Of a stretch of 64,000 nt of DNA, positions 5,547 through 21,431 are shown one piece after another. The notes under the pieces are model-generated. The model saw only the letters and a program-made list of their open reading frames with translations, made no database searches and was not told where the DNA came from. Each line of letters starts with the position of its first letter. Position 1 is the first letter of the stretch. The position numbers and the translations under genes were made by a program. The DNA lies in IMG/VR virus record IMGVR_UViG_3300042566_001780, positions 124,001 through 188,000 of that record, one strand, 5' to 3'.

Positions 5547-6578
5547 ATGATCCCCTCTATCGAAAACAAGCCGAAATCTTTCTGGTCTCGCCCTGAAGGA
5601 ACTACTGGTATGCTGGTTCTTGCAGGTGCTGGTGTTGGTCTCTACTTTGCACTGCCCACCTTGCTGATCTTCATGACCGGTCTGATGGCGCTGCTGGGCA
5701 AAACCATTGCTGTGGTTGTTCTTAGCGCTGTTCTTGGTGCACTGCTTTTTATTCTTACGAATAAAAAGTTCCTGACGCTGATGAACTTCATGTTCAAGTC
5801 GGCGATGCGCAAACTGACCGGGTGGTTCATTGAAATCGATCCTATCGGCATCATGAAGTCTTACATTGAAAAGATGCAAGAGCGTCGAGAAGTTGTTGCT
5901 ACTACTCGTGATCGTCTTCGCGGCCAAATCAAGGTGCTCGATGAAAAGATCCAAAAGGGCCAAAAGCAATATGAAAAATCGATGTCGATGGCCCAACTTG
6001 CAAAAGAGCGCGGTAATAATGGTGTTCTGACTGTTGAATCTCGGCAAGCTATGCGAGTTGAGCAGCTCAACAATGAAACTTACATTCCGCTCAAGATGCA
6101 AATGGAAGCTCATCTTCGTGCTGCAAATAAGTATTACGAAGTGACTGGCACGGTAATTGAAGATCTGAAGAATGAAGTTCAAGCACAATCTGATCGTCGT
6201 GAAATGATTATGGCATCTCATAGCATGATGAAAGCTGCTAAAGCTATTCTTCATGGTGGTACTGATGAGCGTGAAATGTTCGACCAAGCCCTTGAGTTTG
6301 TTGTGACCGATTACGGGATGAAACTTGCGGAAGTGGAAAGCTTTATTGAGAACAGCAAGCCATTTGTTGATAGCCTTGACATGCAAAATGGTGTCTTTGA
6401 AGCTGAAGCTCTTAAGCGACTGCAAGAATGGGAAAACAAGGCTGACAGCATCCTGCTCGGCGATAGCAAACGAATCATGATCGAACAATCTGCTGCAAAT
6501 TCCCCACTTAATTTTAGTGTGAATGTGCCAAGTGTCTCGGCCGTGGATTATAATTCTCTCATTGCTGGTAAGAAGTAA
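5547..6578 (+). CDS. Two-TM protein with long coiled coil, possibly PspA/ESCRT-III-like
   Basis: Start moved to ATG 5547. Two TM helices, then IDPIGIMKSYIEKMQE and about 250 aa of helical hairpin-type coiled coil. Confidence 0.5.
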   Translation: MIPSIENKPKSFWSRPEGTTGMLVLAGAGVGLYFALPTLLIFMTGLMALLGKTIAVVVLSAVLGALLFILTNKKFLTLMNFMFKSAMRKLTGWFIEIDPIGIMKSYIEKMQERREVVATTRDRLRGQIKVLDEKIQKGQKQYEKSMSMAQLAKERGNNGVLTVESRQAMRVEQLNNETYIPLKMQMEAHLRAANKYYEVTGTVIEDLKNEVQAQSDRREMIMASHSMMKAAKAILHGGTDEREMFDQALEFVVTDYGMKLAEVESFIENSKPFVDSLDMQNGVFEAEALKRLQEWENKADSILLGDSKRIMIEQSAANSPLNFSVNVPSVSAVDYNSLIAGKK

Positions 6579-13058: not shown

Positions 13059-13958
13059 ATGGGACAAGGTCGCTGGACATCTGATAGTTTTACAACTTAC
13101 GCATCCACCACCAATTATCGTGCAATGAGCCGTGATGCTGTTTTCAGCAAATCTGTTCAGGCTGAACTGAAGACTGAATCTATCAAGGTTCGTGAATCTC
13201 GTGACTCTGCTGATAGCCCCAATTCGACTCCAATTATCCTCGGTCTGGATGTGACAGGCTCGATGGGTGAATATGCTGAGCGCATTGCCAAGGATGAACT
13301 GCCGAAGCTGATGAATGCAATTTTGGAACAGTCTCCTGTTGCTGATCCGCATCTGATGTTTATGGCTATTGACGATGTGCATGCATACAGTCAAGTGCCG
13401 CTGCAGGTGTCTCAATTTGAAGCCGACATTCGAATTCTGGAACAGCTTCGCAAGATTGTTCTGGTTGGCGGTGGCGGTGGCAACAAGTCTGAGTCTTACG
13501 ACTTGGCATGGTACTGTGCTGGTATGAAGACTTCGATCGACTCTTTCGAGAAGCGTGGTGAAAAAGGTTTCTTGTTTACCTTTGGTGATGAAGAAGCCCC
13601 TTACGAAACTTTGTCGATCAACGAGCAGACTCAAGTGTTTGGCGCTGGACAATATATTCCTATGCAGCCTCGAGAAATCCTGGATGCTGCAAAAAAGATG
13701 TATAATGTCTTTCACATCGTTATTGAACAAGGAAGTTATGCTCGAAGCCGATTCGATTCGGTGAAGAAAACATGGACTGATTTGCTTGGTAATAATGTTC
13801 TGTTCCTGAAAGATTTTCGAAATCTGTCGGAACTGGTAACAAGTACTATTCGAATTGCAAAAGGCGAAGACATGAGTCAAGTCATTCACAATTCGTCTAT
13901 TCCTCAAGAATTGAAGTACGCTTACCAAAATGCGTACGCATCGATGGAAACTGCGTGA
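13059..13958 (+). CDS. von Willebrand factor A (vWA) domain protein
   Basis: IILGLDVTGSMG (MIDAS-like), GGGGGNKSESY, LFTFGDE. Confidence 0.8.
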   Translation: MGQGRWTSDSFTTYASTTNYRAMSRDAVFSKSVQAELKTESIKVRESRDSADSPNSTPIILGLDVTGSMGEYAERIAKDELPKLMNAILEQSPVADPHLMFMAIDDVHAYSQVPLQVSQFEADIRILEQLRKIVLVGGGGGNKSESYDLAWYCAGMKTSIDSFEKRGEKGFLFTFGDEEAPYETLSINEQTQVFGAGQYIPMQPREILDAAKKMYNVFHIVIEQGSYARSRFDSVKKTWTDLLGNNVLFLKDFRNLSELVTSTIRIAKGEDMSQVIHNSSIPQELKYAYQNAYASMETA

Positions 13959-13959
13959 A

Positions 13960-15255
13960 ATGAACCACATAGTTGTTGGCTCTGGCTACGGTGATGAAGG
14001 CAAAGGATTGATGACCGATTATTTGGTCCGTCAATCCAATGCTAAAAACGTCGTTCGGTTTAATGGTGGTGCTCAAGCGGGCCATACTGTCCAAACTGAT
14101 CATCGCCGTTATGTATTTGGACACTTGTCTGCAGGTACGTTTGCCGGAGCCAACACTATTCTGACTCGAGATTTCCTAATCAATCCTCGTGCATTGGTCA
14201 AGGAAATCCAGGATATGGAGGGCATTGGCCCCTCTTGTTATCCTGAAATCAAAGCGCATCGTAGTTGCCGAGTTACAACCATTTTCGATATTGCTATCAA
14301 TGCAGTGTTGGAAATTTCTCGTGGATCTAGTGCTCACGGCTCTTGCGGGATGGGTATCAATGAGACTGTAGTTCGAAATGATAACCCGCTGCTTTTTGGA
14401 ACTCGTTTGTATGATGTCAAGCAAATGAGTGTCAAACAACTTGCAGAAAAACTGAAAACCATTCATGATAAATGGGTACCAATTCGCCTGAAAGAGCATG
14501 GCATTACGATTGGTTCACTCGAGAGCATGAATGACAATTTTGCAAATATTCTTTGCAAAGAAATCAACTACATCCAAGAAGCACGGTTGATGCTTGATGC
14601 ATTGTCTGAAATTTCATATGATGATCAATCTGCGCTGATCGGTAATACGGTTTTTGAGGGTGCTCAGGGTCTTGGGCTTGACGAAGAATTTGGACATTTT
14701 CCACATGTGACCCGGTCAAAAACTGGATCTGTGTGGGCATTCGATTATTTGGATGATTATTTCTTTGGTCAATATGTAGGCAGCTTGGTTTACGGACGAT
14801 CTGGCACGTATTGGCTTGAAAATGTAGAAGTAGTATATGTCACCAGGGCGTATGCTACTCGTCACGGTAATGGACCGCTGTCTGAAGCTGGTGGAAATAT
14901 TGGTGATGGGTCAAATGTTTATGATTTGACTAACAAACCAAATCCATTTCAAGGATCACTTCGATTTGCTCCATTGAATTTGCAATTACTTCGAGATAAC
15001 ATTCAAAAAGATATTGCTCGAACTGATAGAAGTTTGCGGAAAAATGGAAACGCTCCACAACACACATACCAGAAAGTGATTGCACTCACCTGTATGGATC
15101 AACTTGGCAATTATGTCAATGTGATTGATGTTAACGGTGTTATTCGCCCAGTCCTCTCGTCTGATCTTCCACAAATGATTGAGGAACAGGTTGGACTTAG
15201 AGTAAAATACATTAGTCATGGGCCAAAAGCCTCTGACATCAAAAAAGTTTTCTAA
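13960..15255 (+). CDS. Divergent adenylosuccinate synthetase (PurA)-like protein
   Basis: Start moved to ATG 13960. GYGDEGKG, RFNGGAQAGHT, FEGAQG, TRAYATRHGNGP, ISHGP; the aspartate-binding loop is divergent. Confidence 0.85.
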   Translation: MNHIVVGSGYGDEGKGLMTDYLVRQSNAKNVVRFNGGAQAGHTVQTDHRRYVFGHLSAGTFAGANTILTRDFLINPRALVKEIQDMEGIGPSCYPEIKAHRSCRVTTIFDIAINAVLEISRGSSAHGSCGMGINETVVRNDNPLLFGTRLYDVKQMSVKQLAEKLKTIHDKWVPIRLKEHGITIGSLESMNDNFANILCKEINYIQEARLMLDALSEISYDDQSALIGNTVFEGAQGLGLDEEFGHFPHVTRSKTGSVWAFDYLDDYFFGQYVGSLVYGRSGTYWLENVEVVYVTRAYATRHGNGPLSEAGGNIGDGSNVYDLTNKPNPFQGSLRFAPLNLQLLRDNIQKDIARTDRSLRKNGNAPQHTYQKVIALTCMDQLGNYVNVIDVNGVIRPVLSSDLPQMIEEQVGLRVKYISHGPKASDIKKVF

Positions 15256-15345: not shown

Positions 15346-16737
15346 ATGGAACAACTTAGCTACAACCCTATCCTCGACGTCGATTCGTACAAAGCTGCAC
15401 ACCAGTTTTCGTACCCAAAGAACGTCACCGGCATGTTCTCTTATATTGAGGCACGCACCAAGAATGATGTGATGATTCCGTTTGGACTGTCGATGTTCTT
15501 GCAAAAGTACATGTCAATCCAAATAACGAAGGCTTATATCGATGAAGCTGAAGAATTCTTCAAGCTGCACGGTGAACCATTTTCTCGTGAACCCTGGGAG
15601 CACATTGTCAACGAATATGACGGCTTTATGCCTCTCACTATTCGTGCAGTACCTGAAGGAACTCCGGTGAAAAGCTCTAATGCAATTGTCACTGTTCAAT
15701 GTGATGATCCTGCAGTGCACTGGCTGTCTTCTTACGTCGAAACCAAAATCCAACGCGCAATTTGGTATCCTACTACGATTGCTTCAATGGACTATGCAAT
15801 CAAGCGGGTCTTTAAGGAATTCTATGAAGCTACTGGGGCAGATATGAATTTGCTCCCGTTTGCCCTCCATGATTTTGGTGCGCGTGGTGTCGCAAGCTAC
15901 GAGCAATCTGAAATTGGCGGTGCAGCACACATGGTCAACTTCATGGGTTCTGACACCGTGGCAGGTATTCGTGCTGCAAACTTCTATTACAGTGAGCAAA
16001 TGGCCGGGTTTTCTGTGCCGGCTACTGAGCACAGTGTGGAATGCTCGTTTGGTGAAGAAAATGAAATCGGTTATCTGGAACACGTCATTGACAATCTGGC
16101 CAAGCCTGGTGGTATTGTGTCTATTGTGATTGACGGCTATGATGTTTATCGTGCTGCGCAAACTCTTTGCACTACGCTGAAAGACAAGATCATTGCAAGC
16201 GGCGTCAAGGTCGTATTCCGCCCTGATAGTGGGGATATGCAAGTGGTGGTGCCTCGTATCCTTGAATTGCAGGCCGCTACTTTTGGTTATGAAGTCAATG
16301 AAAAAGGCTTCAAGAAGATTAAATACGTTGGCATTATCCAAGGTGATGGCGTTGATCACTTGTCCATTCGTTCGCTGCTTGGCAAAATGAAGGTGATGGG
16401 TTTCTCTGCTGATAACGTGGTTTTTGGATCTGGTGGTGCACTGCTCCAAAAGGTCAATCGAGACGTTTTCAAATTCGCCCAAAAAGCTTCTGCTGTTCGG
16501 ATTGATGGGAAGTGGGTCGGTATCAGTAAAAATCCAATCACCGATCCCGGAAAGCGAAGCAAGGAAGGCGTTTTGACTCTTGTTAAGAGTCGACTGACTG
16601 GTGAATACTCTACGGCTCGAATTGATGATAAGCGTCTTGATTCTGAGTTTGAAGACCAAATGGAACTTGTCTACTACAATGGCAAGATCATGAATTCTCC
16701 AACTTTGTCTGAAATTCGAGAACGCTGCAAGCTGTAA
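15346..16737 (+). CDS. nadV: Nicotinamide phosphoribosyltransferase (NAMPT/NadV)
   Basis: ILDVDSYKAAH, LHDFGARG, VPATEHS, VSIVIDGYD, VVFRPDSGD, IIQGDG, FGSGGALLQKVNRD, KRSKEG. Confidence 0.95.
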   Translation: MEQLSYNPILDVDSYKAAHQFSYPKNVTGMFSYIEARTKNDVMIPFGLSMFLQKYMSIQITKAYIDEAEEFFKLHGEPFSREPWEHIVNEYDGFMPLTIRAVPEGTPVKSSNAIVTVQCDDPAVHWLSSYVETKIQRAIWYPTTIASMDYAIKRVFKEFYEATGADMNLLPFALHDFGARGVASYEQSEIGGAAHMVNFMGSDTVAGIRAANFYYSEQMAGFSVPATEHSVECSFGEENEIGYLEHVIDNLAKPGGIVSIVIDGYDVYRAAQTLCTTLKDKIIASGVKVVFRPDSGDMQVVVPRILELQAATFGYEVNEKGFKKIKYVGIIQGDGVDHLSIRSLLGKMKVMGFSADNVVFGSGGALLQKVNRDVFKFAQKASAVRIDGKWVGISKNPITDPGKRSKEGVLTLVKSRLTGEYSTARIDDKRLDSEFEDQMELVYYNGKIMNSPTLSEIRERCKL

Positions 16738-16813: not shown

Positions 16814-17425
16814 ATGACCGAAATTAACTTAGATAACTCCCCACTGCAATTCATTGTTACTACTTTAGACGAAGAAGATCGACCCAAAATTGAATCTCAT
16901 TTACTACGTCTTTCTAAAGAAGATCGCTATTTGCGATTTTTTGCTGCACTTGGTGATTCCCAAATCAAACACTACGCTTCAACTATTGACCTGAAAAAGG
17001 GGAAGGCTTTCGGCATCATTACCCTGCCAGATCGCAAGCTGGTTGCATTAGCTCATGTATCTGAGATTGAAAAATCTGATCATAGAGTCATTGCAGAAAT
17101 GGGCGTCTCAGTTGATGCCGATGTTCGAGTTCAAGGCCTTGGAAAAAGACTGATGGATCGCACGGTGACTTACTGCCAAACCCATGGAATCAACACACTG
17201 TTTATGTCATGCTTGCGCGAGAACAAAGTCATGCAAAAGCTGGCAAAAGATTTTGATTTGCGGATTGTGCTTGACGCTGGAGAGGCCATGGCAGAACTTG
17301 ATTTGGATCCACTGGACAAAATGAAAGCCATGCCGAAAGAAATGCTATACCAGCAAATTTCTTTGTTTGACAAAGCATTCAAGCACAACAAAATGTTGAT
17401 CGATGCCGTTTTTAGTGTACAATAA
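16814..17425 (+). CDS. GNAT-family acetyltransferase
   Basis: DRYLRFF, AEMGVSVDADVRVQGLGKRLM (acetyl-CoA binding motif), ENKVMQKLA. Confidence 0.85.
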   Translation: MTEINLDNSPLQFIVTTLDEEDRPKIESHLLRLSKEDRYLRFFAALGDSQIKHYASTIDLKKGKAFGIITLPDRKLVALAHVSEIEKSDHRVIAEMGVSVDADVRVQGLGKRLMDRTVTYCQTHGINTLFMSCLRENKVMQKLAKDFDLRIVLDAGEAMAELDLDPLDKMKAMPKEMLYQQISLFDKAFKHNKMLIDAVFSVQ

Positions 17426-17457: not shown

Positions 17458-17898
17458 ATGTTCAAATCTGCTATCTTGGCTTCTGCAATTCTTGCACTTT
17501 CTGCAAGTAGCATGGCTTCCAGCGACTCTGGAGATTGGGAACTCTTGGCAAAAGGCACAGATCGCACTTACACCGTTTTGACTGAAAGCATTCAAATTGA
17601 CATCACTAACCAAAGTGCTCAATTTGCAATGAAGGTTGAATATACACCGCCGGTCAAGTTGAGTAAGAAGCCAGGTGATGTACTTGTTACCTCTGTTGAG
17701 ACTACATTGGTGTTGTGTGATGCTGATAAAGTCATTTCAATGACTCGACTGGGCATGAATCAGAAGGGTGAATACGTGGTTGATGATAATTATGCCATGG
17801 TTTATTCCAAGACGAAAGCGCCAAACATGGTCATTACACACATTTACAATTTTGCATGTGAAAAAGTTTCGAAGCATGTGAAAAAGAAGACGATTTAG
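17458..17898 (+). CDS. Secreted/periplasmic hypothetical protein
   Basis: Signal peptide MFKSAILASAILALSASSMA; two Cys; ends TAG TGA. Confidence 0.7.
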   Translation: MFKSAILASAILALSASSMASSDSGDWELLAKGTDRTYTVLTESIQIDITNQSAQFAMKVEYTPPVKLSKKPGDVLVTSVETTLVLCDADKVISMTRLGMNQKGEYVVDDNYAMVYSKTKAPNMVITHIYNFACEKVSKHVKKKTI

Positions 17899-17915
17899 TG
17901 ATAGAATTCATTTAA

Positions 17916-17992
17916 CGCCACTTAGCTCAGTTGGTCAGAGCAAGAGCTTCTAACACTCCAGGTCGCGGGTTCGAGCCCCGCAGTGGCGACCA
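17916..17992 (+). tRNA. tRNA with CUA anticodon (putative amber suppressor); anticodon stem has two mismatches
   Basis: Acceptor CGCCACT/AGTGGCG, A73, encoded CCA; D arm GCTC/GAGC; loop TT-CTA-AC at 17948-17954 in standard register; variable AGGTC; T arm GCGGG-TTCGAGC-CCCGC. Confidence 0.75.
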
Positions 17993-18022: not shown

Positions 18023-20017
18023 ATGTCTGATTTCAAGTTTTTTGCTACCAAAGTTTTTGACAAGTTTACTGAAATGTCGAAGGGTGAACTGTTCACCGTC
18101 GATATTGATGGTGACAACCTGTACGCCCATTACATCAGCTCTTTCCCTGATGGCACTAATCCGATCTTCAAGACTCGGACAGAGCATGAGTGCTCTACCT
18201 GCAAGAACTTCATTCGCAATCTGGGTCTTGTTGTTTCCATCTCTGGTGGCAAACTGGATTCTGTTTGGAATGTGAAGGGTCTGCAAAGTCCCTACAAAGA
18301 AGTGGCTGCTGCACTTCATCAATATGTGGTGGTGAATAATGTCAAGACCATCTTCCGCTCTACAGAACGTTCGTATGGTGTTGCCGAATCCAAGCAATTG
18401 ATTGACAACAACATTCATCGTTGGAATCACCTACACGGTGTTGTGGCTGCAAAGCATTATGCCAAAGCAAATGCTGCAACTCAAATTGGCGAGTTCAATG
18501 CCCATATTCAGGTATTTTCTCGTGGGCTGGAAGAATTTACGAAAGACTCGATTGATTCTGTTCTGGATCTGATTGCCAGCAAGTCCATTTATCGCGGTGA
18601 AGAGCATAAGCCGGCTGTCGATGCGTTCAAGAAGCTGTTTGATGCTTATCACAAGCTGAAGACTGCCAAAGAGAAGAACATTTTCGTCATGGAAAATGCA
18701 AATACCTTTGGTGCTCGTATTCGTAACACTGTGATTGGCACCCTGATTCAAGATCTGTCGGCTGGTGAAGACTTGGAAAAGGCAGTTCGCTCGTTTGAAA
18801 CGAAGGTTTCACCTACCAACTACAAGCGCACTACGGCTCTCATTACACCCCGAATGATTCAAGATGCAATGAAGACTATCGGTGAACTTGGTCTTGAGTC
18901 TGCGCTGGAACGTCGTCTGGCAAACATCTCGGATGTTAGTGTCAATAACGTTCTGTGGGTGGATAATGCTGTCAAGCCCATGATGAAGGGCGGTATTGAA
19001 GGCTTGTTGATGGAGGCAACTTCGAGCAAGGATGCTGCTATTAGCTTCAAGAATCCGGTCAATATCGGGATTGAAGAGTTTATGGCTGATATTCTGCCAA
19101 GCGCTTCTGAAATCAACATGTGCGTGAAGAATGAGCATCTGGCAAATTTTGCTACGCTCACTGCTCCTGTTCATGCTGATTCTGAAAAACTGTTTAAGTG
19201 GAACAATGCGTTTGGTTGGTCGTATGATGGCAACATCACTGATACCATTCGTGAACGAGTGAAGGCTGCTGGTGGTAACGTTGATGCTAAGCTTCGATTT
19301 AGCCTGTCGTGGTTCAACTACGATGATCTGGACATCTATGTGACTGAACCTAACGGTCGAGAAATTTATTTCTGCAACAAGGATGGAAAACTTGATGTTG
19401 ACATGAATGCTGGTGGTGGTCGCAGCCGTACCCCGGTTGAGAACGTCAGTTTCAAGAATCCTCAAGATGGAGTTTACGTTGTCAAGGTGAATCAGTATTC
19501 TCGTCGTGAAACTACAAATGTTGGTTTTGTGATTGAAGCAGCCTCGGGTTCTGGTACTAATCAGTACTCGTACAATAAGGCAGTTTCTGGCAAAATTAAT
19601 GTTGGTAGCTTTACCGTGAAGAACGGTGTCATTGTTGATGTCAAGATGGGTGCTGGAATTTCTGGTACTGGAATCTCCGAAACTAAATGGGGTGTCAAGA
19701 CTGAGAGCCCGGTGAAAGTGAAGACTGTTATGTTTAGCCCCAACTATTGGGATGACAATAAGGTCGGTAACAAGCATTGGTTCTTTATCTTGGAAGGTTG
19801 CAAAACTGACCAAGCAGCCCGAGGGATTTATAATGAATTCCTTGACGCGCGACTTGAAAAGCACCGCAAAGTGTTTGAAGTCCTGGGTGACAAGACAAAG
19901 TGTCCAGCTATTGATGATCAATTGAGTGGTTTGGGTTTCTCTTCTACTCGAAAAGATCAAGTTTTGGTTAGTGTGAAACTCGGTAAATCGACAAAAGTGT
20001 TTAATATCAATTTTTAA
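18023..20017 (+). CDS. Large hypothetical protein (664 aa) with YfaP/DUF2135-like segment
   Basis: HECSTCKNF Cys motif; DDLDIYVTEPNG...LDVDMNAGG...PVENV segment. Confidence 0.7.
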   Translation: MSDFKFFATKVFDKFTEMSKGELFTVDIDGDNLYAHYISSFPDGTNPIFKTRTEHECSTCKNFIRNLGLVVSISGGKLDSVWNVKGLQSPYKEVAAALHQYVVVNNVKTIFRSTERSYGVAESKQLIDNNIHRWNHLHGVVAAKHYAKANAATQIGEFNAHIQVFSRGLEEFTKDSIDSVLDLIASKSIYRGEEHKPAVDAFKKLFDAYHKLKTAKEKNIFVMENANTFGARIRNTVIGTLIQDLSAGEDLEKAVRSFETKVSPTNYKRTTALITPRMIQDAMKTIGELGLESALERRLANISDVSVNNVLWVDNAVKPMMKGGIEGLLMEATSSKDAAISFKNPVNIGIEEFMADILPSASEINMCVKNEHLANFATLTAPVHADSEKLFKWNNAFGWSYDGNITDTIRERVKAAGGNVDAKLRFSLSWFNYDDLDIYVTEPNGREIYFCNKDGKLDVDMNAGGGRSRTPVENVSFKNPQDGVYVVKVNQYSRRETTNVGFVIEAASGSGTNQYSYNKAVSGKINVGSFTVKNGVIVDVKMGAGISGTGISETKWGVKTESPVKVKTVMFSPNYWDDNKVGNKHWFFILEGCKTDQAARGIYNEFLDARLEKHRKVFEVLGDKTKCPAIDDQLSGLGFSSTRKDQVLVSVKLGKSTKVFNINF

Positions 20018-20024
20018 AAGGTGA

Positions 20025-20447
20025 ATGAAAATGACTGCAAATATCTTTATGCAAGCTTCCCGCATGAAACTGCGTTTCCCCTCTAACAAGGGTGATCTAA
20101 CTGTGGAACAACTGTGGGATCTTCCGCTGTCTTCCAAGACGGCTTTTGATCTGGATACCATTGCCCGTGCAGTGTATACTCAGATGAATGCTGTGTCGGA
20201 ACCGAGTTTTGTGGCAGTTCGTTCCAATCCCGTCAAGGAAAAGCTGGAATTGTCTCTGGAAATCGTGAAGCACATCATCTCGGTGAAGATGGCTGAAAAT
20301 GAAGTGGCCGCAAAGCGTGCCGCAGCTCGAGTGGAACGTGATCGACTGATGTCTATCCTGGCAGATAAGCAGGATGCAGAAACCCGATCGCTGTCTGTGG
20401 ATGAAATCCGCAAGCGCCTCGCGGATCTGGATGCAGAAACTGCTTAA
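20025..20447 (+). CDS. Hypothetical coiled-coil protein
   Basis: LRFPSNKGDLTVEQLWDLPL N-terminus and helical C-terminus; directly follows the 664-aa gene. Confidence 0.75.
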   Translation: MKMTANIFMQASRMKLRFPSNKGDLTVEQLWDLPLSSKTAFDLDTIARAVYTQMNAVSEPSFVAVRSNPVKEKLELSLEIVKHIISVKMAENEVAAKRAAARVERDRLMSILADKQDAETRSLSVDEIRKRLADLDAETA

Positions 20448-20458
20448 TTGAAAACGTA

Positions 20459-20489
20459 AATAGGATAGGGAATTGTTCCCTATCCTATT
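20459..20489 (+). terminator. 14-bp hairpin separating the amber-interrupted gene pair from the upstream operon
   Basis: AATAGGATAGGGAA-TTG-TTCCCTATCCTATT; no clear T tract. Confidence 0.7.
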
Positions 20490-20508: not shown

Positions 20509-20847
20509 ATGAAATCGTAGATCAACCAAAAATTCTATCTGTACTCTATCTCTCGCTGTGATATCCCAATCGCACATCGCGCCATTCAGGCAACACACTC
20601 CGCGATGGAGTATTGTTACCAATTTGGCCGCTCTCCGGATTTTCATCCGTCTTTCATTCATCTAACTGCAAAAGACAAAGATGCTCTACTTGAGCTAAAG
20701 TCTAAGCTGAATGCATCTGGCATTCAGACTGCAGAATTTCACGAACCGTACAGTGACTGGGGGCTGACCTCAATTTCATGTTGTCTTTCTGAAGATCAGC
20801 GTGGAATGTTGTCGCATCTCAAACTTTGGTCCATTAAGGAGAAATGA
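20509..20847 (+). CDS. Peptidyl-tRNA hydrolase PTH2-like protein with in-frame TAG at codon 4
   Basis: GGAG RBS, then ATG AAA TCG TAG ATC, in frame with ORF 20605. The intervening sequence encodes YLYSISRCDIPIAHRAIQATHSA, matching the PTH2-fold N-terminal RxD...QxxH pattern. Confidence 0.75.
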
Positions 20848-20849
20848 GC

Positions 20850-21431
20850 ATGACGACGTAGATTCCTACTGTTGAAGAAGCAATTGAGAAATCTAGTGAG
20901 GGTTTTCAGTTTGCTACGGTGTCATTCTTGAGGCACGGTGAGCTTGTTGCTGAAAGGTTTGAGGACCTTATGTCTTTGGAAAGAAAACACCCCTGGGCCT
21001 CACCGGGATGGTTCTCGAGTCATTTTGAAGACATTCGATCTAAGCTATTACCACAAATGGACATGATCAAGACCTATCAAAAATTTCACGACATTGGAAA
21101 ACCATTCTGTAAAGTGGTTGATGAAAATGGAAAAGCTCATTATCCCAATCATGCAAAAATTTCAGCACAAATCTGGAACACATCTGGTCGATGTCCTATC
21201 ATTGGAGAATTGATTGCCCGTGATATGGAATTTCATCTCTTGAAACCTAGTGAAATTGATGAAAACTATCCCATTGATTCGCTAAGCTTGATTTTGATGG
21301 TGACTGCGTTATGTGAACTTTATGCAAATGCAGAAATGTTTGATGGACTTGAGTCTGATAGCTTCAAGATTAAATGGAAGCGATTGGACAAAATTGGGAG
21401 CAAACTAATTAGTAGGATGTTGAATCTGTGA
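20850..21431 (+). CDS. HD-domain protein with in-frame TAG at codon 4
   Basis: AAGGAG RBS, then ATG ACG ACG TAG ATT, in frame with ORF 20919. LRHGELV...YQKFHDIGKPF...HYPNHA HD motifs; the GTG at 20919 has no RBS. Confidence 0.75.

What the first reader, a model, noticed from the sequence alone, without database searches (positions are those of the whole stretch)
17916..17992. Solitary tRNA with CUA anticodon outside the main tRNA cluster
Seen: the 23 nt between the D stem and T stem fit the standard 1+5+7+5+5 layout, with loop TT-CTA-AC. The anticodon stem pairs only 3 of 5 (A27-C43 and C31-A39 mismatches). The D loop lacks A20, the established main ArgRS determinant, which argues against an Arg(UCU) reading. 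It has C1-G72, A73 and encoded CCA. It sits 23 kb from the other 11 tRNAs, in the same co-directional block as the amber-interrupted genes. Established: U35 amber suppressors are often charged by GlnRS or LysRS. Inference: a weak or regulated suppressor.
Basis: partly seen in the sequence, partly recalled or inferred. Interest (0 to 1): 0.8.

Follow-up and report, generated by a model that had tools for sequence, protein, structure and literature searches.

The report
Phage suppressor tRNA unlocks amber-gated genes
This lone phage tRNA reads the UAG stop codon, and its likely job is to unlock two nearby tRNA-recycling genes that each carry a UAG as their fourth codon, a small translational lock-and-key module that recurs in many giant phages and seems not to have been described.

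Summary
The tRNA at 17916-17992 (+) is real. ARAGORN gives anticodon CUA and Rfam scores it 59.7 bits. It has the reported A27·C43 and C31·A39 mismatches, C1-G72, A73 and an encoded CCA.

The mismatches are not decay. An IMG/VR scan that left those positions free found 57 distinct phage CUA tRNAs with the same G28-A29-G30/C40-U41-C42 stem core. About 50 of them keep C31·A39, while the acceptor and T stems covary. The pattern is absent from 185,579 cellular genomes.

The 292-kb genome does not recode TAG globally. Two adjacent genes 2.5 kb downstream on the same strand start SD-ATG-x-x-TAG:
- a Pth2-fold protein, 20509-20847;
- an HD-motif protein, 20850-21431.

Their conserved N-termini lie after the TAG, with no usable start codon in between.

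This leader motif occurs 37 times with TAG, against 3 (TGA) and 3 (TAA), in loci carrying such tRNAs. It is also present in cultured phages XacN1, Xoo-sp13, GAP32, ME3 and pT24. In 15 loci chosen through the protein alone, 14 are TAG-gated, 10 of them with a CUA tRNA upstream. The single TGA-gated locus carries two tRNA(UCA) instead.

I conclude that the tRNA is the key of an amber-gated tRNA-recycling module. The amino acid inserted and the purpose of the gate are unknown.

The parts
17916..17992 (+). tRNA with anticodon CUA (amber suppressor). Anticodon arm AGAGC-UUCUAAC-ACUCC with A27·C43 and C31·A39. C1-G72, A73, encoded CCA.
   Evidence: ARAGORN and Rfam 59.7 bits. Family alignment and covariation. 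The gene is identical in contigs of three other aquatic metagenomes whose flanking genes carry SNPs.
17878..17907 (+). Promoter-like site (GTGAAA, 18 nt, TG-n-TAGAAT) ending 9 nt before the tRNA 5' end. Weak evidence only.
   Evidence: Consensus scan. The number of sites in the region is not above that in shuffles.
17458..17904 (+). Upstream 146-aa gene of unknown function that ends in the tandem stops TAG-TGA-TAG, 11 nt before the tRNA. Context only.
   Evidence: No Pfam hit.
18023..20447 (+). Two intervening genes, of 664 aa and 140 aa. The 664-aa protein is widespread in phages. Neither is shown to belong to the module, and in most related loci the gated genes lie nearer the tRNA.
20459..20489 (.). 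14-bp perfect hairpin between the 140-aa gene and the ribosome-binding site of the first gated gene. Function unknown.
   Evidence: sequence.
20509..20847 (+). Amber-gated gene 1. GGAG, then ATG AAA TCG TAG(20518-20520) ATC AAC and so on, then a 108-aa Pth2-fold protein, stop TGA. The conserved residues Y8, D14, Q23 and H26 lie between the TAG and the first ATG/GTG/TTG, which is codon 29 after the TAG.
   Evidence: AlphaFold2 pLDDT 90.7. The top 14 Foldseek PDB hits are 13 Pth2-family chains plus Atu0240, an uncharacterised protein, all prob 1.0, TM 0.6-0.8. Weak Pfam PTH2 hit, 13.1 bits. The XacN1 homologue passes the Pfam cut-off.
20850..21431 (+). Amber-gated gene 2. AGGAG, then ATG ACG ACG TAG(20859-20861) ATT CCT and so on, then a 189-aa protein with an FHDIGKP (HD-type) motif, like the HD segment of class II tRNA nucleotidyltransferases.
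   Evidence: Homologues in L078, L104 and L108, and in 12 of 13 further loci, are TAG-gated in the same way. PDB profile hit to the A. aeolicus A-adding enzyme, E 0.003. Fused to the Pth2 domain in XacN1 and Xoo-sp13.

Best explanation
The tRNA is a working amber suppressor. Its dedicated targets are in-frame UAG codons placed 1-5 codons after the start of a small set of phage genes.

In this genome the targets are two adjacent genes 2.5 kb downstream. One encodes a Pth2-fold (peptidyl-tRNA-hydrolase-like) protein and the other an HD-motif protein of the tRNA-nucleotidyltransferase type. Without the tRNA, ribosomes starting at the Shine-Dalgarno-led ATG make only a tripeptide and stop. With it, they read through and make the full protein.

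The tRNA and the gated genes therefore form a lock-and-key module inside an otherwise standard-code phage.

Shown here:
- the tRNA and its family;
- the gate codons and their conservation;
- the statistical and physical linkage of tRNA and gate;
- the covariation of gate codon with suppressor anticodon;
- the Pth2 fold.

Inferred:
- The tRNA is charged by a host synthetase. Any residue would do, because the gate sits in a non-conserved leader.
- The very early position and the almost constant A after UAG favour suppression over RF1. Short peptidyl-tRNAs are the ones prone to drop-off rather than clean termination, so ordinary 3' UAG stops are largely spared.
- The gate delays or conditions synthesis of two tRNA 3'-end enzymes until the phage tRNA has built up.
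For: 1. The tRNA is real and selected.
- See for the gene itself.
- In 53 family members every acceptor pair, and 3 T-stem pairs, show compensatory changes. A73 occurs in 47/53 and an encoded CCA in 51/53.

2. The gate is real.
- In G000 and in L078, L104, L126, L137, L132, L091 and L108, the conserved Pth2-like N-terminus follows a TAG. In G000 the first ATG/GTG/TTG comes only at codon 29 after the TAG, downstream of four invariant N-terminal residues, and the other loci have no usable start before that region either.
- An SD-led ATG lies 0-4 codons upstream of the TAG.

3. The motif is specific to TAG. 'SD + ATG + 0-5 codons + stop + at least 80-codon frame' was counted as follows:
- 554 kb of loci with family CUA tRNAs: TAG 37, TGA 3, TAA 3.
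- 632 kb of other viral loci: TAG 7, TAA 5, TGA 0. Two of the 7 TAG motifs come from family loci (L038, L059, L063, L067) whose tRNA ARAGORN missed, which leaves 5.

4. Independent sample chosen by the protein.
- 14 of 15 loci are TAG-gated.
- 10 of the 15, all TAG-gated, have one or two CUA tRNAs 160-2826 nt upstream on the same strand.
- The single TGA-gated locus (L164) has two tRNA(UCA) and no CUA tRNA. Its HD-like gene is TGA-gated too.

5. Cultured phages show the same leader: XacN1, Xoo-sp13, GAP32, ME3 and pT24. A CUA tRNA was found in the first four.

6. There is no other use for the tRNA in this genome. No gene is split internally by TAG, and TAG-ended genes show no unusual extensions.

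7. The codon after the gate begins with A in 36 of 39 cases.

8. Early codons are a known zone of peptidyl-tRNA drop-off that Pth counteracts (PMC2490762, PMC10192219).
Against: - There is no expression, charging or proteomic data, so read-through is inferred from comparative genomics alone.
- The codon after TAG is ATT, ATC or ATA in 29 of 39 cases. These are weak non-canonical start codons, so reinitiation after a mini-ORF cannot be excluded for those genes.
- In this genome the tRNA and the gated genes are separated by two unrelated genes.
- The genome also encodes an RF1-like protein, which would oppose UAG read-through.
- The record is only about 82% complete by CheckV, so further targets may be missing.
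- GAP32 and ME3 use CUA tRNAs with normal anticodon stems. The C31·A39 trait is therefore not needed for gating and remains unexplained.
Confidence: 0.82

Rival explanations
1. Mini-ORF coupling. ATG-x-x-TAG is a tiny leader ORF. After it terminates, ribosomes reinitiate at the next codon, often AUU, AUC or AUA. On this view the CUA tRNA is unrelated to these genes.
For: 29 of 39 codons after the TAG are ATT, ATC or ATA. AUU is a known rare bacterial start codon (my own knowledge).
Against: Reinitiation gives no reason to prefer TAG, yet the counts are 37 TAG against 3 TGA and 3 TAA, and only in loci that carry CUA tRNAs. Many gates are followed by AAC, ACC, GTT or ACA, which are not start codons. 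The one TGA-gated locus carries tRNA(UCA) in place of tRNA(CUA), for both gated genes.
Confidence: 0.07
2. Genome-wide recoding. The tRNA serves a code-15-like reassignment (TAG read as an amino acid) of late genes, as in crAss-like and Lak phages.
For: Suppressor tRNAs usually accompany recoding in phages (PMC13037316).
Against: A codon-bias scan of all 292 kb finds only one long TAG-split frame. That one is a topoisomerase gene broken by homing-endonuclease ORFs with their own starts. TAG ends 21-31 ordinary genes. Loci around family tRNAs show no excess of TAG-split frames: 56 TAG, 87 TAA, 82 TGA. The genome carries an RF1-like gene, and no second RF-domain gene (such as RF2) was found. The XacN1 authors also found no read-through targets at gene ends (PMC5852040).
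Confidence: 0.04
3. General suppressor aimed at the host or kept as insurance. It reads through host UAG stops to disturb host proteins, or rescues phage nonsense mutants, and the gated genes are incidental.
For: Such roles have been proposed for orphan phage suppressors (PMC8386662). tmRNA genes lie in 9 of the roughly 66 loci that carry a family tRNA, which could point to read-through stress.
Against: It does not explain the tight, strand-matched linkage to gated genes or the codon-anticodon covariation. It could still be a side effect alongside gating.
Confidence: 0.05
4. Shifted tRNA-Arg(UCU) or a decaying pseudogene. The unpaired 31·39 gives a 9-nt loop in which UCU (33-35) is the anticodon; or the gene is dead.
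For: The best full-length BLAST hits are phage tRNA-Arg(UCU) at 78-80% identity. The only cellular tRNAs with the same arm and C31·A39 are three actinobacterial tRNA-Arg(UCU). The MFE fold of the single sequence is not a cloverleaf.
Against: ARAGORN reads CUA. Family members with loop CUCUAAA would have C33 in the shifted register. A20 and C35 are absent. A normal tRNA-Arg(UCU) exists at genome 848-924. The family shows strong covariation and an encoded CCA. Linkage to UAG gates gives the CUA anticodon a function.
Confidence: 0.02

Closest known systems
The two 'tRNA-Sup' (CUA) genes of Xanthomonas jumbo phage XacN1 (AP018399.1; Yoshikawa et al. 2018, PMC5852040)
   Same: Same D arm and same anticodon arm, including A27·C43 and C31·A39; 83% identity over 71 nt. 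Standard-code jumbo phage. XacN1 also has the gated gene: ORF364, an HD-Pth2 fusion preceded by SD-ATG-AAG-TAG.
   Different: XacN1 has tandem copies inside its terminal repeats, about 200 kb from the gated gene. Its loop is CUCUAAA (here UUCUAAC) and its first pair is G1-C72 (here C1-G72). The published analysis looked only for C-terminal extensions and reported no targets. ORF364 is annotated from an internal ATG.
Stop-codon recoding in phages (code 15, TAG read as Gln) proposed to time late or lytic genes (Borges et al., bioRxiv 10.1101/2021.08.26.457843; crAss-like and Lak phages)
   Same: A phage-encoded CUA tRNA makes translation of some phage genes depend on the phage's own suppressor. 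The idea of a translational timer is the same.
   Different: There, many TAG codons are scattered through many late genes and the amino acid matters, and the recoding papers I read mention RF2 genes in TAG-recoded phages. Here there is one TAG per gene, always within the first six codons and in a non-conserved leader, in two or three small accessory genes. The rest of the genome uses TAG as a stop, and the release-factor gene present is RF1-like.
Engineered amber-gate circuits (a suppressor-tRNA feed-forward loop to remove leaky expression, PMC7969014)
   Same: The same logic: a gene carrying an early amber codon is silent unless a suppressor tRNA is co-expressed.
   Different: Those are synthetic constructs in E. 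coli. This is a natural, conserved phage module.
Autoregulation of prfB (RF2) through an early in-frame UGA, and lambda bar minigenes (my own knowledge; minigene effects in PMC2490762)
   Same: An early in-frame stop in a translation-factor gene sets its own output. ORFs of 2-5 codons ending in a stop cause peptidyl-tRNA drop-off that Pth counteracts, and the gated gene here is Pth-like.
   Different: prfB uses a +1 frameshift and no suppressor tRNA. Bar minigenes are free-standing and toxic. Neither involves a dedicated tRNA.

Membership tests
tRNA (Rfam RF00005), elongator type | Cloverleaf with 7-bp acceptor, D arm, anticodon arm and T arm; conserved U8, G18G19 and GTTCGA T loop | tested here: met
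   Rfam 59.7 bits against a gathering score of 29; ARAGORN. The alifold consensus of 53 relatives is a cloverleaf. The anticodon stem has only 3 Watson-Crick pairs.
Amber suppressor tRNA | Anticodon CUA at 34-36, flanked by U33 and a purine at 37 | tested here: met
   Loop U32 U33 C34 U35 A36 A37 C38.
Amber suppressor tRNA | Is aminoacylated and inserts a residue at UAG in vivo | not testable with these tools
   Indirect support only: conserved UAG gates next to the tRNA, and the TGA-gate/tRNA(UCA) swap in L164.
Phage C31·A39 CUA-tRNA lineage (defined here) | A26, stem core G28-A29-G30/C40-U41-C42 with C31·A39 unpaired, weak or mismatched 27-43, loop YUCUAAA, A73, encoded CCA | tested here: met
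   All features present except C38 instead of A38 and C1-G72 instead of G1-C72. Zero matches in 185,579 cellular genomes.
Code-15 (TAG-recoded) phage system | Many in-frame TAG codons inside genes, and loss of TAG as a terminator | tested here: not met
tRNA-Arg(UCU) | UCU at 34-36 with C35; A20 in the D loop (E. coli ArgRS determinants, my own knowledge) | tested here: not met
   U35; D loop AGTTGGTCA without A20 (alignments).
tRNA-Pyl (ARAGORN's label for any CUA tRNA) | Short D loop, 3-nt variable loop, 6-bp anticodon stem (my own knowledge) | tested here: not met
   Standard 9-nt D loop, 5-nt variable loop and 3-5-bp anticodon stem. PylRS was not searched for.
Pth2 peptidyl-tRNA hydrolase (Pfam PF01981), for gated gene 1 | Pth2 alpha/beta fold | tested here: met
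   Model pLDDT 90.7. The top 14 Foldseek hits are 13 Pth2-family chains (2zv3, 1wn2, 3erj, 1q7s, 1xty, 1rlk) plus Atu0240 (2gax), an uncharacterised protein, followed by a sharp drop in score.
Pth2 peptidyl-tRNA hydrolase (Pfam PF01981), for gated gene 1 | Score above the Pfam gathering threshold | tested here: not met
   The window protein scores 13.1 bits against a cut-off of 23. The XacN1 homologue scores 25.3 bits and passes. So this is a divergent branch of the family.
Pth2 peptidyl-tRNA hydrolase (Pfam PF01981), for gated gene 1 | Catalytic residues and hydrolase activity | tested here: inconclusive
   The profile alignment shows that the phage family lacks the two-residue insertion before the conserved basic residue of archaeal Pth2. 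Activity cannot be tested here.
HD-domain phosphohydrolase (tRNA-nucleotidyltransferase type), for gated gene 2 | H...HD...D metal-binding motif and a profile match | tested here: inconclusive
   H76, D77, H97 and D121 are invariant. PDB profile hit to the A. aeolicus A-adding enzyme, E 0.003, over 56 residues. Pfam HD matches only the ME3 homologue, at E 0.016 and below the cut-off.

The most novel reading that the evidence does not exclude
Giant phages across Proteobacteria and Bacteroidota carry a portable translational lock. A suppressor tRNA (CUA, or UCA in one lineage) acts as the key. A stop codon placed at codons 2-6 of tRNA 3'-end enzymes (Pth2-like, HD-like, and a third ~185-aa protein of unknown fold) acts as the lock. 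The early position exploits the poor termination and high drop-off of very short peptidyl-tRNAs, so the suppressor reads these gates efficiently while normal gene-end stops still work. The conserved three-pair anticodon stem (C31·A39) would be an adaptation for this early-codon read-through. This would explain the 'orphan' suppressor tRNAs of standard-code phages such as XacN1, and would correct the annotation of these genes in GenBank.
Probability: 0.45. Interest if true: 0.88.

Novelty: new variant of a known kind. Interest (0 to 1): 0.8.

Why it matters
Suppressor tRNAs in phages that use the standard code have been a loose end. The XacN1 paper states that no targets could be found (PMC5852040). 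This analysis gives them a concrete and testable target.

It shows that stop-codon gating can work as a one-codon switch and need not take the form of wholesale recoding. It also links the switch to tRNA-recycling enzymes that have been proposed to counter host tRNA-cleaving defences (PMC7824862).

Practical consequences:
- The Pth2-like gene is mis-annotated (truncated) in XacN1 and GAP32. In Serratia BF, the Erwinia pEa_SNUABM phages and Yersinia fHe-Yen9-04, no annotated feature lies under the match.
- The module exists in cultured phages with tractable hosts, so it can be tested directly.
- The tRNAs, which evolved to suppress efficiently in ordinary bacteria, may interest people who engineer amber suppression.

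Tried and rejected
1. Whole-genome scans for genes split by TAG into two long pieces. Only one strong case appeared, at genome 274016. It is a type II topoisomerase gene interrupted by homing-endonuclease ORFs that have their own start. I first concluded that there were no amber-interrupted genes. That was wrong for gates within the first few codons, and searches corrected it.

2. Tests for adaptation of TAG-ended genes, using back-up stops and extension length. There was no difference from TAA/TGA genes (Mann-Whitney p = 0.76).

3. Looking for a sense-tRNA paralogue in the same loci to infer identity. No consistent isotype emerged.

4. aaRS genes for Tyr/Trp and for Glu/Gln in the genome. None found.

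5. Close relatives of the phage, sought in three ways:
- megablast against GenBank phages found nothing;
- the 664-aa neighbour finds only relatives at 52% identity or less, and none of the six loci it brought in has a CUA tRNA;
- reads from four metagenomes show an unchanged tRNA but too few SNPs to test for selection.

6. An exact 21-base arm pattern found nothing in IMG/VR. Looser patterns worked.

7. Fold of the third gated family (~185 aa, not present in this genome). No PDB match, and no relation to the Pth2-like family by hhalign.

8. Inferring the inserted amino acid from homologues. This is impossible because the gate lies in a non-conserved leader.

9. Literature searches for C31·A39 or for N-terminal amber gating. 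Nothing found.

Full report
**The object**

The window is bases 124001-188000 of a single 291,687-bp virus record:
- 39.7% G+C;
- CheckV about 82% complete, linear;
- assembled from a lake-water metagenome.

ARAGORN finds a 77-nt tRNA at 17916-17992 (+) with anticodon CUA. Rfam's tRNA model scores it 59.7 bits.

- C1-G72, A73 and an encoded CCA;
- D loop AGTTGGTCA, without A20;
- anticodon arm AGAGC-TTCTAAC-ACTCC, in which A27·C43 and C31·A39 cannot pair.

The genome has 17 tRNAs. Eleven lie 23 kb downstream and five at the genome start, among them a normal tRNA-Arg(UCU).

**The odd anticodon stem is a family trait**

The best database match is one of the two 'tRNA-Sup' genes of Xanthomonas jumbo phage XacN1. 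It has the same D arm and the same anticodon arm, including both mismatches, but a different acceptor stem.

I then scanned IMG/VR with a pattern that fixes only the three central stem pairs, UCUAA and the T loop. Positions 27, 31, 32, 38, 39 and 43 were left free. The scan found 57 distinct CUA tRNAs:
- C31·A39 occurs in about 50 of them.
- Position 27-43 is G·U, A·C, A·A, G-C or A·G.

In 53 aligned members:
- all seven acceptor pairs and three T-stem pairs show compensatory changes;
- A73 is present in 47;
- CCA is encoded in 51.

The same pattern has no match in one genome from each of 185,579 bacterial and archaeal species. With the anticodon also left free, the only cellular hits are three actinobacterial tRNA-Arg(UCU). 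This hints that the lineage arose from tRNA-Arg(UCU) by a one-base shift of the loop. That is an inference.

Of the 69 CUA tRNAs found across the fetched loci, 48 have no other tRNA within 1.5 kb, so being 'solitary' is normal for them. The review part of PMC13092985 reports experiments in which unpairing 27-43 made CUA suppressors more efficient. The mismatches therefore give no ground for calling this tRNA weak.

**No genome-wide recoding**

In a rough gene set TAG ends 31 of 361 genes. In a stricter set it ends 21 of 316.

A codon-bias scan of all six frames finds 3 TAG codons flanked by coding sequence on both sides, against 18 for TGA and 16 for TAA, which are simply adjacent genes in the same frame. 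The one strong TAG case is a topoisomerase gene broken by homing-endonuclease ORFs.

TAG-ended genes show no special back-up stops. The XacN1 authors likewise found nothing by reading through gene ends.

**The targets**

Clustering the ORFs around family tRNAs showed two protein families that always lie downstream on the tRNA's strand. Aligning one of them revealed that the window copy, called as an 80-aa ORF, lacks the conserved N-terminus.

Translating upstream gives GGAG-N7-ATG AAA TCG TAG ATC AAC CAA AAA TTC TAT CTG TAC and onward. The conserved N-terminus, with the invariant residues Y8, D14, Q23 and H26, lies after an in-frame TAG at 20518-20520. The next ATG/GTG/TTG comes only at codon 29.

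The following gene begins the same way: AGGAG-N9-ATG ACG ACG TAG ATT CCT, with TAG at 20859-20861.

Homologues from unrelated metagenomes repeat the design with different leaders:
- ATG AAG GCC TAG;
- ATG TAG;
- ATG CTG TAG;
- ATG AAA TCG TAG;
- ATG TCG TAG;
- ATG AGC GAT TAT TTA TAG.

**Statistics**

I counted the motif 'SD + ATG + 0-5 codons + stop + at least 80 open codons', after removing duplicates.
- In 554 kb of loci with family tRNAs: TAG 37, TGA 3, TAA 3.
- In 632 kb of other viral loci fetched by chance: TAG 7, TAA 5, TGA 0. Two of the 7 TAG motifs come from family loci (L038, L059, L063, L067) whose tRNA ARAGORN had missed, which leaves 5.
- In this whole genome the motif occurs with TAG exactly twice, at the two genes above.
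- The codon after the gate starts with A in 36 of 39 cases (ATT 22, AAC 6, ATC 5, ATA 2, ACG 1).

**Independent test**

I fetched loci through the Pth2-like protein alone.
- In 14 of 15 loci the conserved N-terminus is preceded by ATG or GTG, 0-3 codons, and TAG.
- Ten of the 15 loci, all TAG-gated, have one or two CUA tRNAs 160-2826 nt upstream on the same strand. Several of these have ordinary anticodon stems.
- The fifteenth locus (L164) has TGA at the gate and carries two tandem tRNA(UCA) and no CUA tRNA.
- Its HD-like gene is TGA-gated as well, while the HD-like gene is TAG-gated in the 12 other loci that have it.

This covariation of gate codon with suppressor anticodon is the strongest evidence that the tRNA decodes the gate.

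**What the gated genes are**

Gene 1 (108 aa after the gate) folds with pLDDT 90.7. Its top 14 PDB matches are 13 Pth2-family chains, from archaea and human Bit1, plus Atu0240, an uncharacterised protein. All have probability 1.0 and TM 0.6-0.8, and the score then drops sharply. Sequence profiles agree weakly, and the XacN1 homologue passes Pfam's PTH2 cut-off. Catalytic residues could not be confirmed.

Gene 2 (189 aa) has invariant H76, D77, H97 and D121. It matches the HD segment of the A. aeolicus A-adding tRNA nucleotidyltransferase at E 0.003.

In XacN1 and Xoo-sp13 the two domains are fused in one protein. Its true start is again SD-ATG-AAG(-AAG)-TAG, upstream of the annotated ATG.

Both proteins therefore probably act on tRNA 3' ends. 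Pth2 in jumbo phages has been noted before and linked to ribosome rescue after tRNA cleavage (PMC7824862), but without any mention of the gate.

A third gated family (~185 aa, starting IEYACKDVVFHFNKK) accompanies another branch of the tRNA family in about 27 loci. It has no fold match and is absent from this genome.

**Cultured phages**

The gate is present in several cultured phages:
- Cronobacter phage GAP32: ATG GCA CAA TAG AAT;
- Acinetobacter phage ME3: ATG ACT TAG ATT, with a CUA tRNA 450 nt upstream, then the Pth2-like gene, then the HD-like gene;
- Tenacibaculum phage pT24: ATG AAA TAG ATA;
- XacN1 and Xoo-sp13, as described above.

The gene is annotated from an internal ATG in GAP32 and XacN1. 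In several relatives (Serratia BF, the Erwinia pEa_SNUABM phages, Yersinia fHe-Yen9-04) no annotated feature lies under the match.

**Mechanism, and what is inferred**

Shown:
- a selected CUA tRNA;
- conserved early UAG gates in linked genes;
- codon-anticodon covariation.

Inferred:
- Host synthetases charge the tRNA. Because the gate lies in a variable leader, any residue will do, which would make the module portable between hosts.
- The early position matters. Ribosomes holding very short peptidyl-tRNAs are prone to drop-off, and short ORFs behave as 'minigenes' whose effects Pth counteracts (PMC2490762, PMC10192219). An abundant suppressor may therefore win at codons 2-6 while RF1 still ends normal genes.
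- The nearly constant A after UAG fits known context effects on suppression (my own knowledge).

The purpose of the gate is not known. It could be a delay until the tRNA accumulates, a lock on proteins that are harmful if made out of context, or feedback between a tRNA and a tRNA hydrolase.

**Open points**

- The residue inserted at the gate.
- The role of C31·A39. GAP32 and ME3 gate with normal-stem tRNAs.
- Why this genome also has an RF1-like gene.
- Whether the tRNA has its own promoter. A TG-n-TAGAAT site ends 9 nt upstream, but the scan is not above chance.

Noticed in passing
outside the window: genome 1729-2403 (+) = L082:1729-2403: An RF1-like gene lies inside the 5-tRNA cluster at the genome start. 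It lacks domain 1: it starts at the equivalent of T. maritima RF1 residue 87. It has a PPT (PxT-type) motif and GGQ. It contains one in-frame TGA (1834-1836) right after '...MKKG', where bacterial RF1 has, from my memory, a conserved Trp. This could be a UGA read-through or autoregulatory device, or a pseudogene. No tRNA(UCA) was found in the genome.
   Followed up: partly
window 13930-15252 and 15346-16734 (+): A gene like adenylosuccinate synthetase (PurA or possibly PurZ) and a nicotinamide phosphoribosyltransferase gene lie upstream of the tRNA, followed by a GNAT acetyltransferase (16814-17422). A PurZ role in 2-aminoadenine DNA was not examined.
   Followed up: no
outside the window: genome 661-737 (+): A 77-nt tRNA with anticodon CAA (Leu) has a short variable arm. 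Bacterial tRNA-Leu normally has a long one, so its identity is doubtful.
   Followed up: no
outside the window: genome 272464-275677 (L081:464-3677): A type II topoisomerase gene is cut into pieces by two related ORFs of about 365 aa that look like homing endonucleases. One junction mimics an amber-split gene.
   Followed up: partly
L001, L057, L078, L096, L098, L108, L120, L130, L133: Phage-encoded tmRNA genes, mostly permuted, lie within a few kb of family CUA tRNAs in 9 of about 66 loci. This may be a link between suppression and ribosome rescue, or simply clustering of translation genes.
   Followed up: no
L164:5724-5800 and 5860-5936, with gates near L164:6990 and 8640: A phage lineage in which the whole module has switched from UAG/CUA to UGA/UCA. 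It has two tandem opal-suppressor tRNAs, and both gated genes carry TGA.
   Followed up: yes
about 27 loci, e.g. L068:4747-5304, L093:4034-4618, L130:5726-6334: A third amber-gated protein family (~185 aa, N-terminus IEYACKDVVFHFNKK) lies directly downstream of the other branch of the tRNA family. The model has pLDDT 83 and finds no PDB fold match. Function unknown.
   Followed up: partly
L150:1995-2068 (Acinetobacter phage ME3) and L151:402-481, 769-848 (Tenacibaculum phage pT24): The ME3 CUA tRNA has C33 instead of the near-universal U33. pT24 has two 80-nt 'undetermined' tRNAs with an extended anticodon stem and loop UAUAUUA. No CUA tRNA was seen near the TAG-gated gene of pT24.
   Followed up: no
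window 20459-20489: A perfect 14-bp hairpin lies immediately upstream of the ribosome-binding site of the first gated gene. It has no T-tract on the + strand, so it is not an obvious terminator for the gated genes.
   Followed up: no
run X2 laid on window 17939-17974: An aquatic metagenome that holds a close variant of this phage (run X2) also contains a short contig with another member of the CUA-tRNA family (acceptor GCGCTAG..., depth 16.5). Several phages with this tRNA type therefore coexist there.
   Followed up: no
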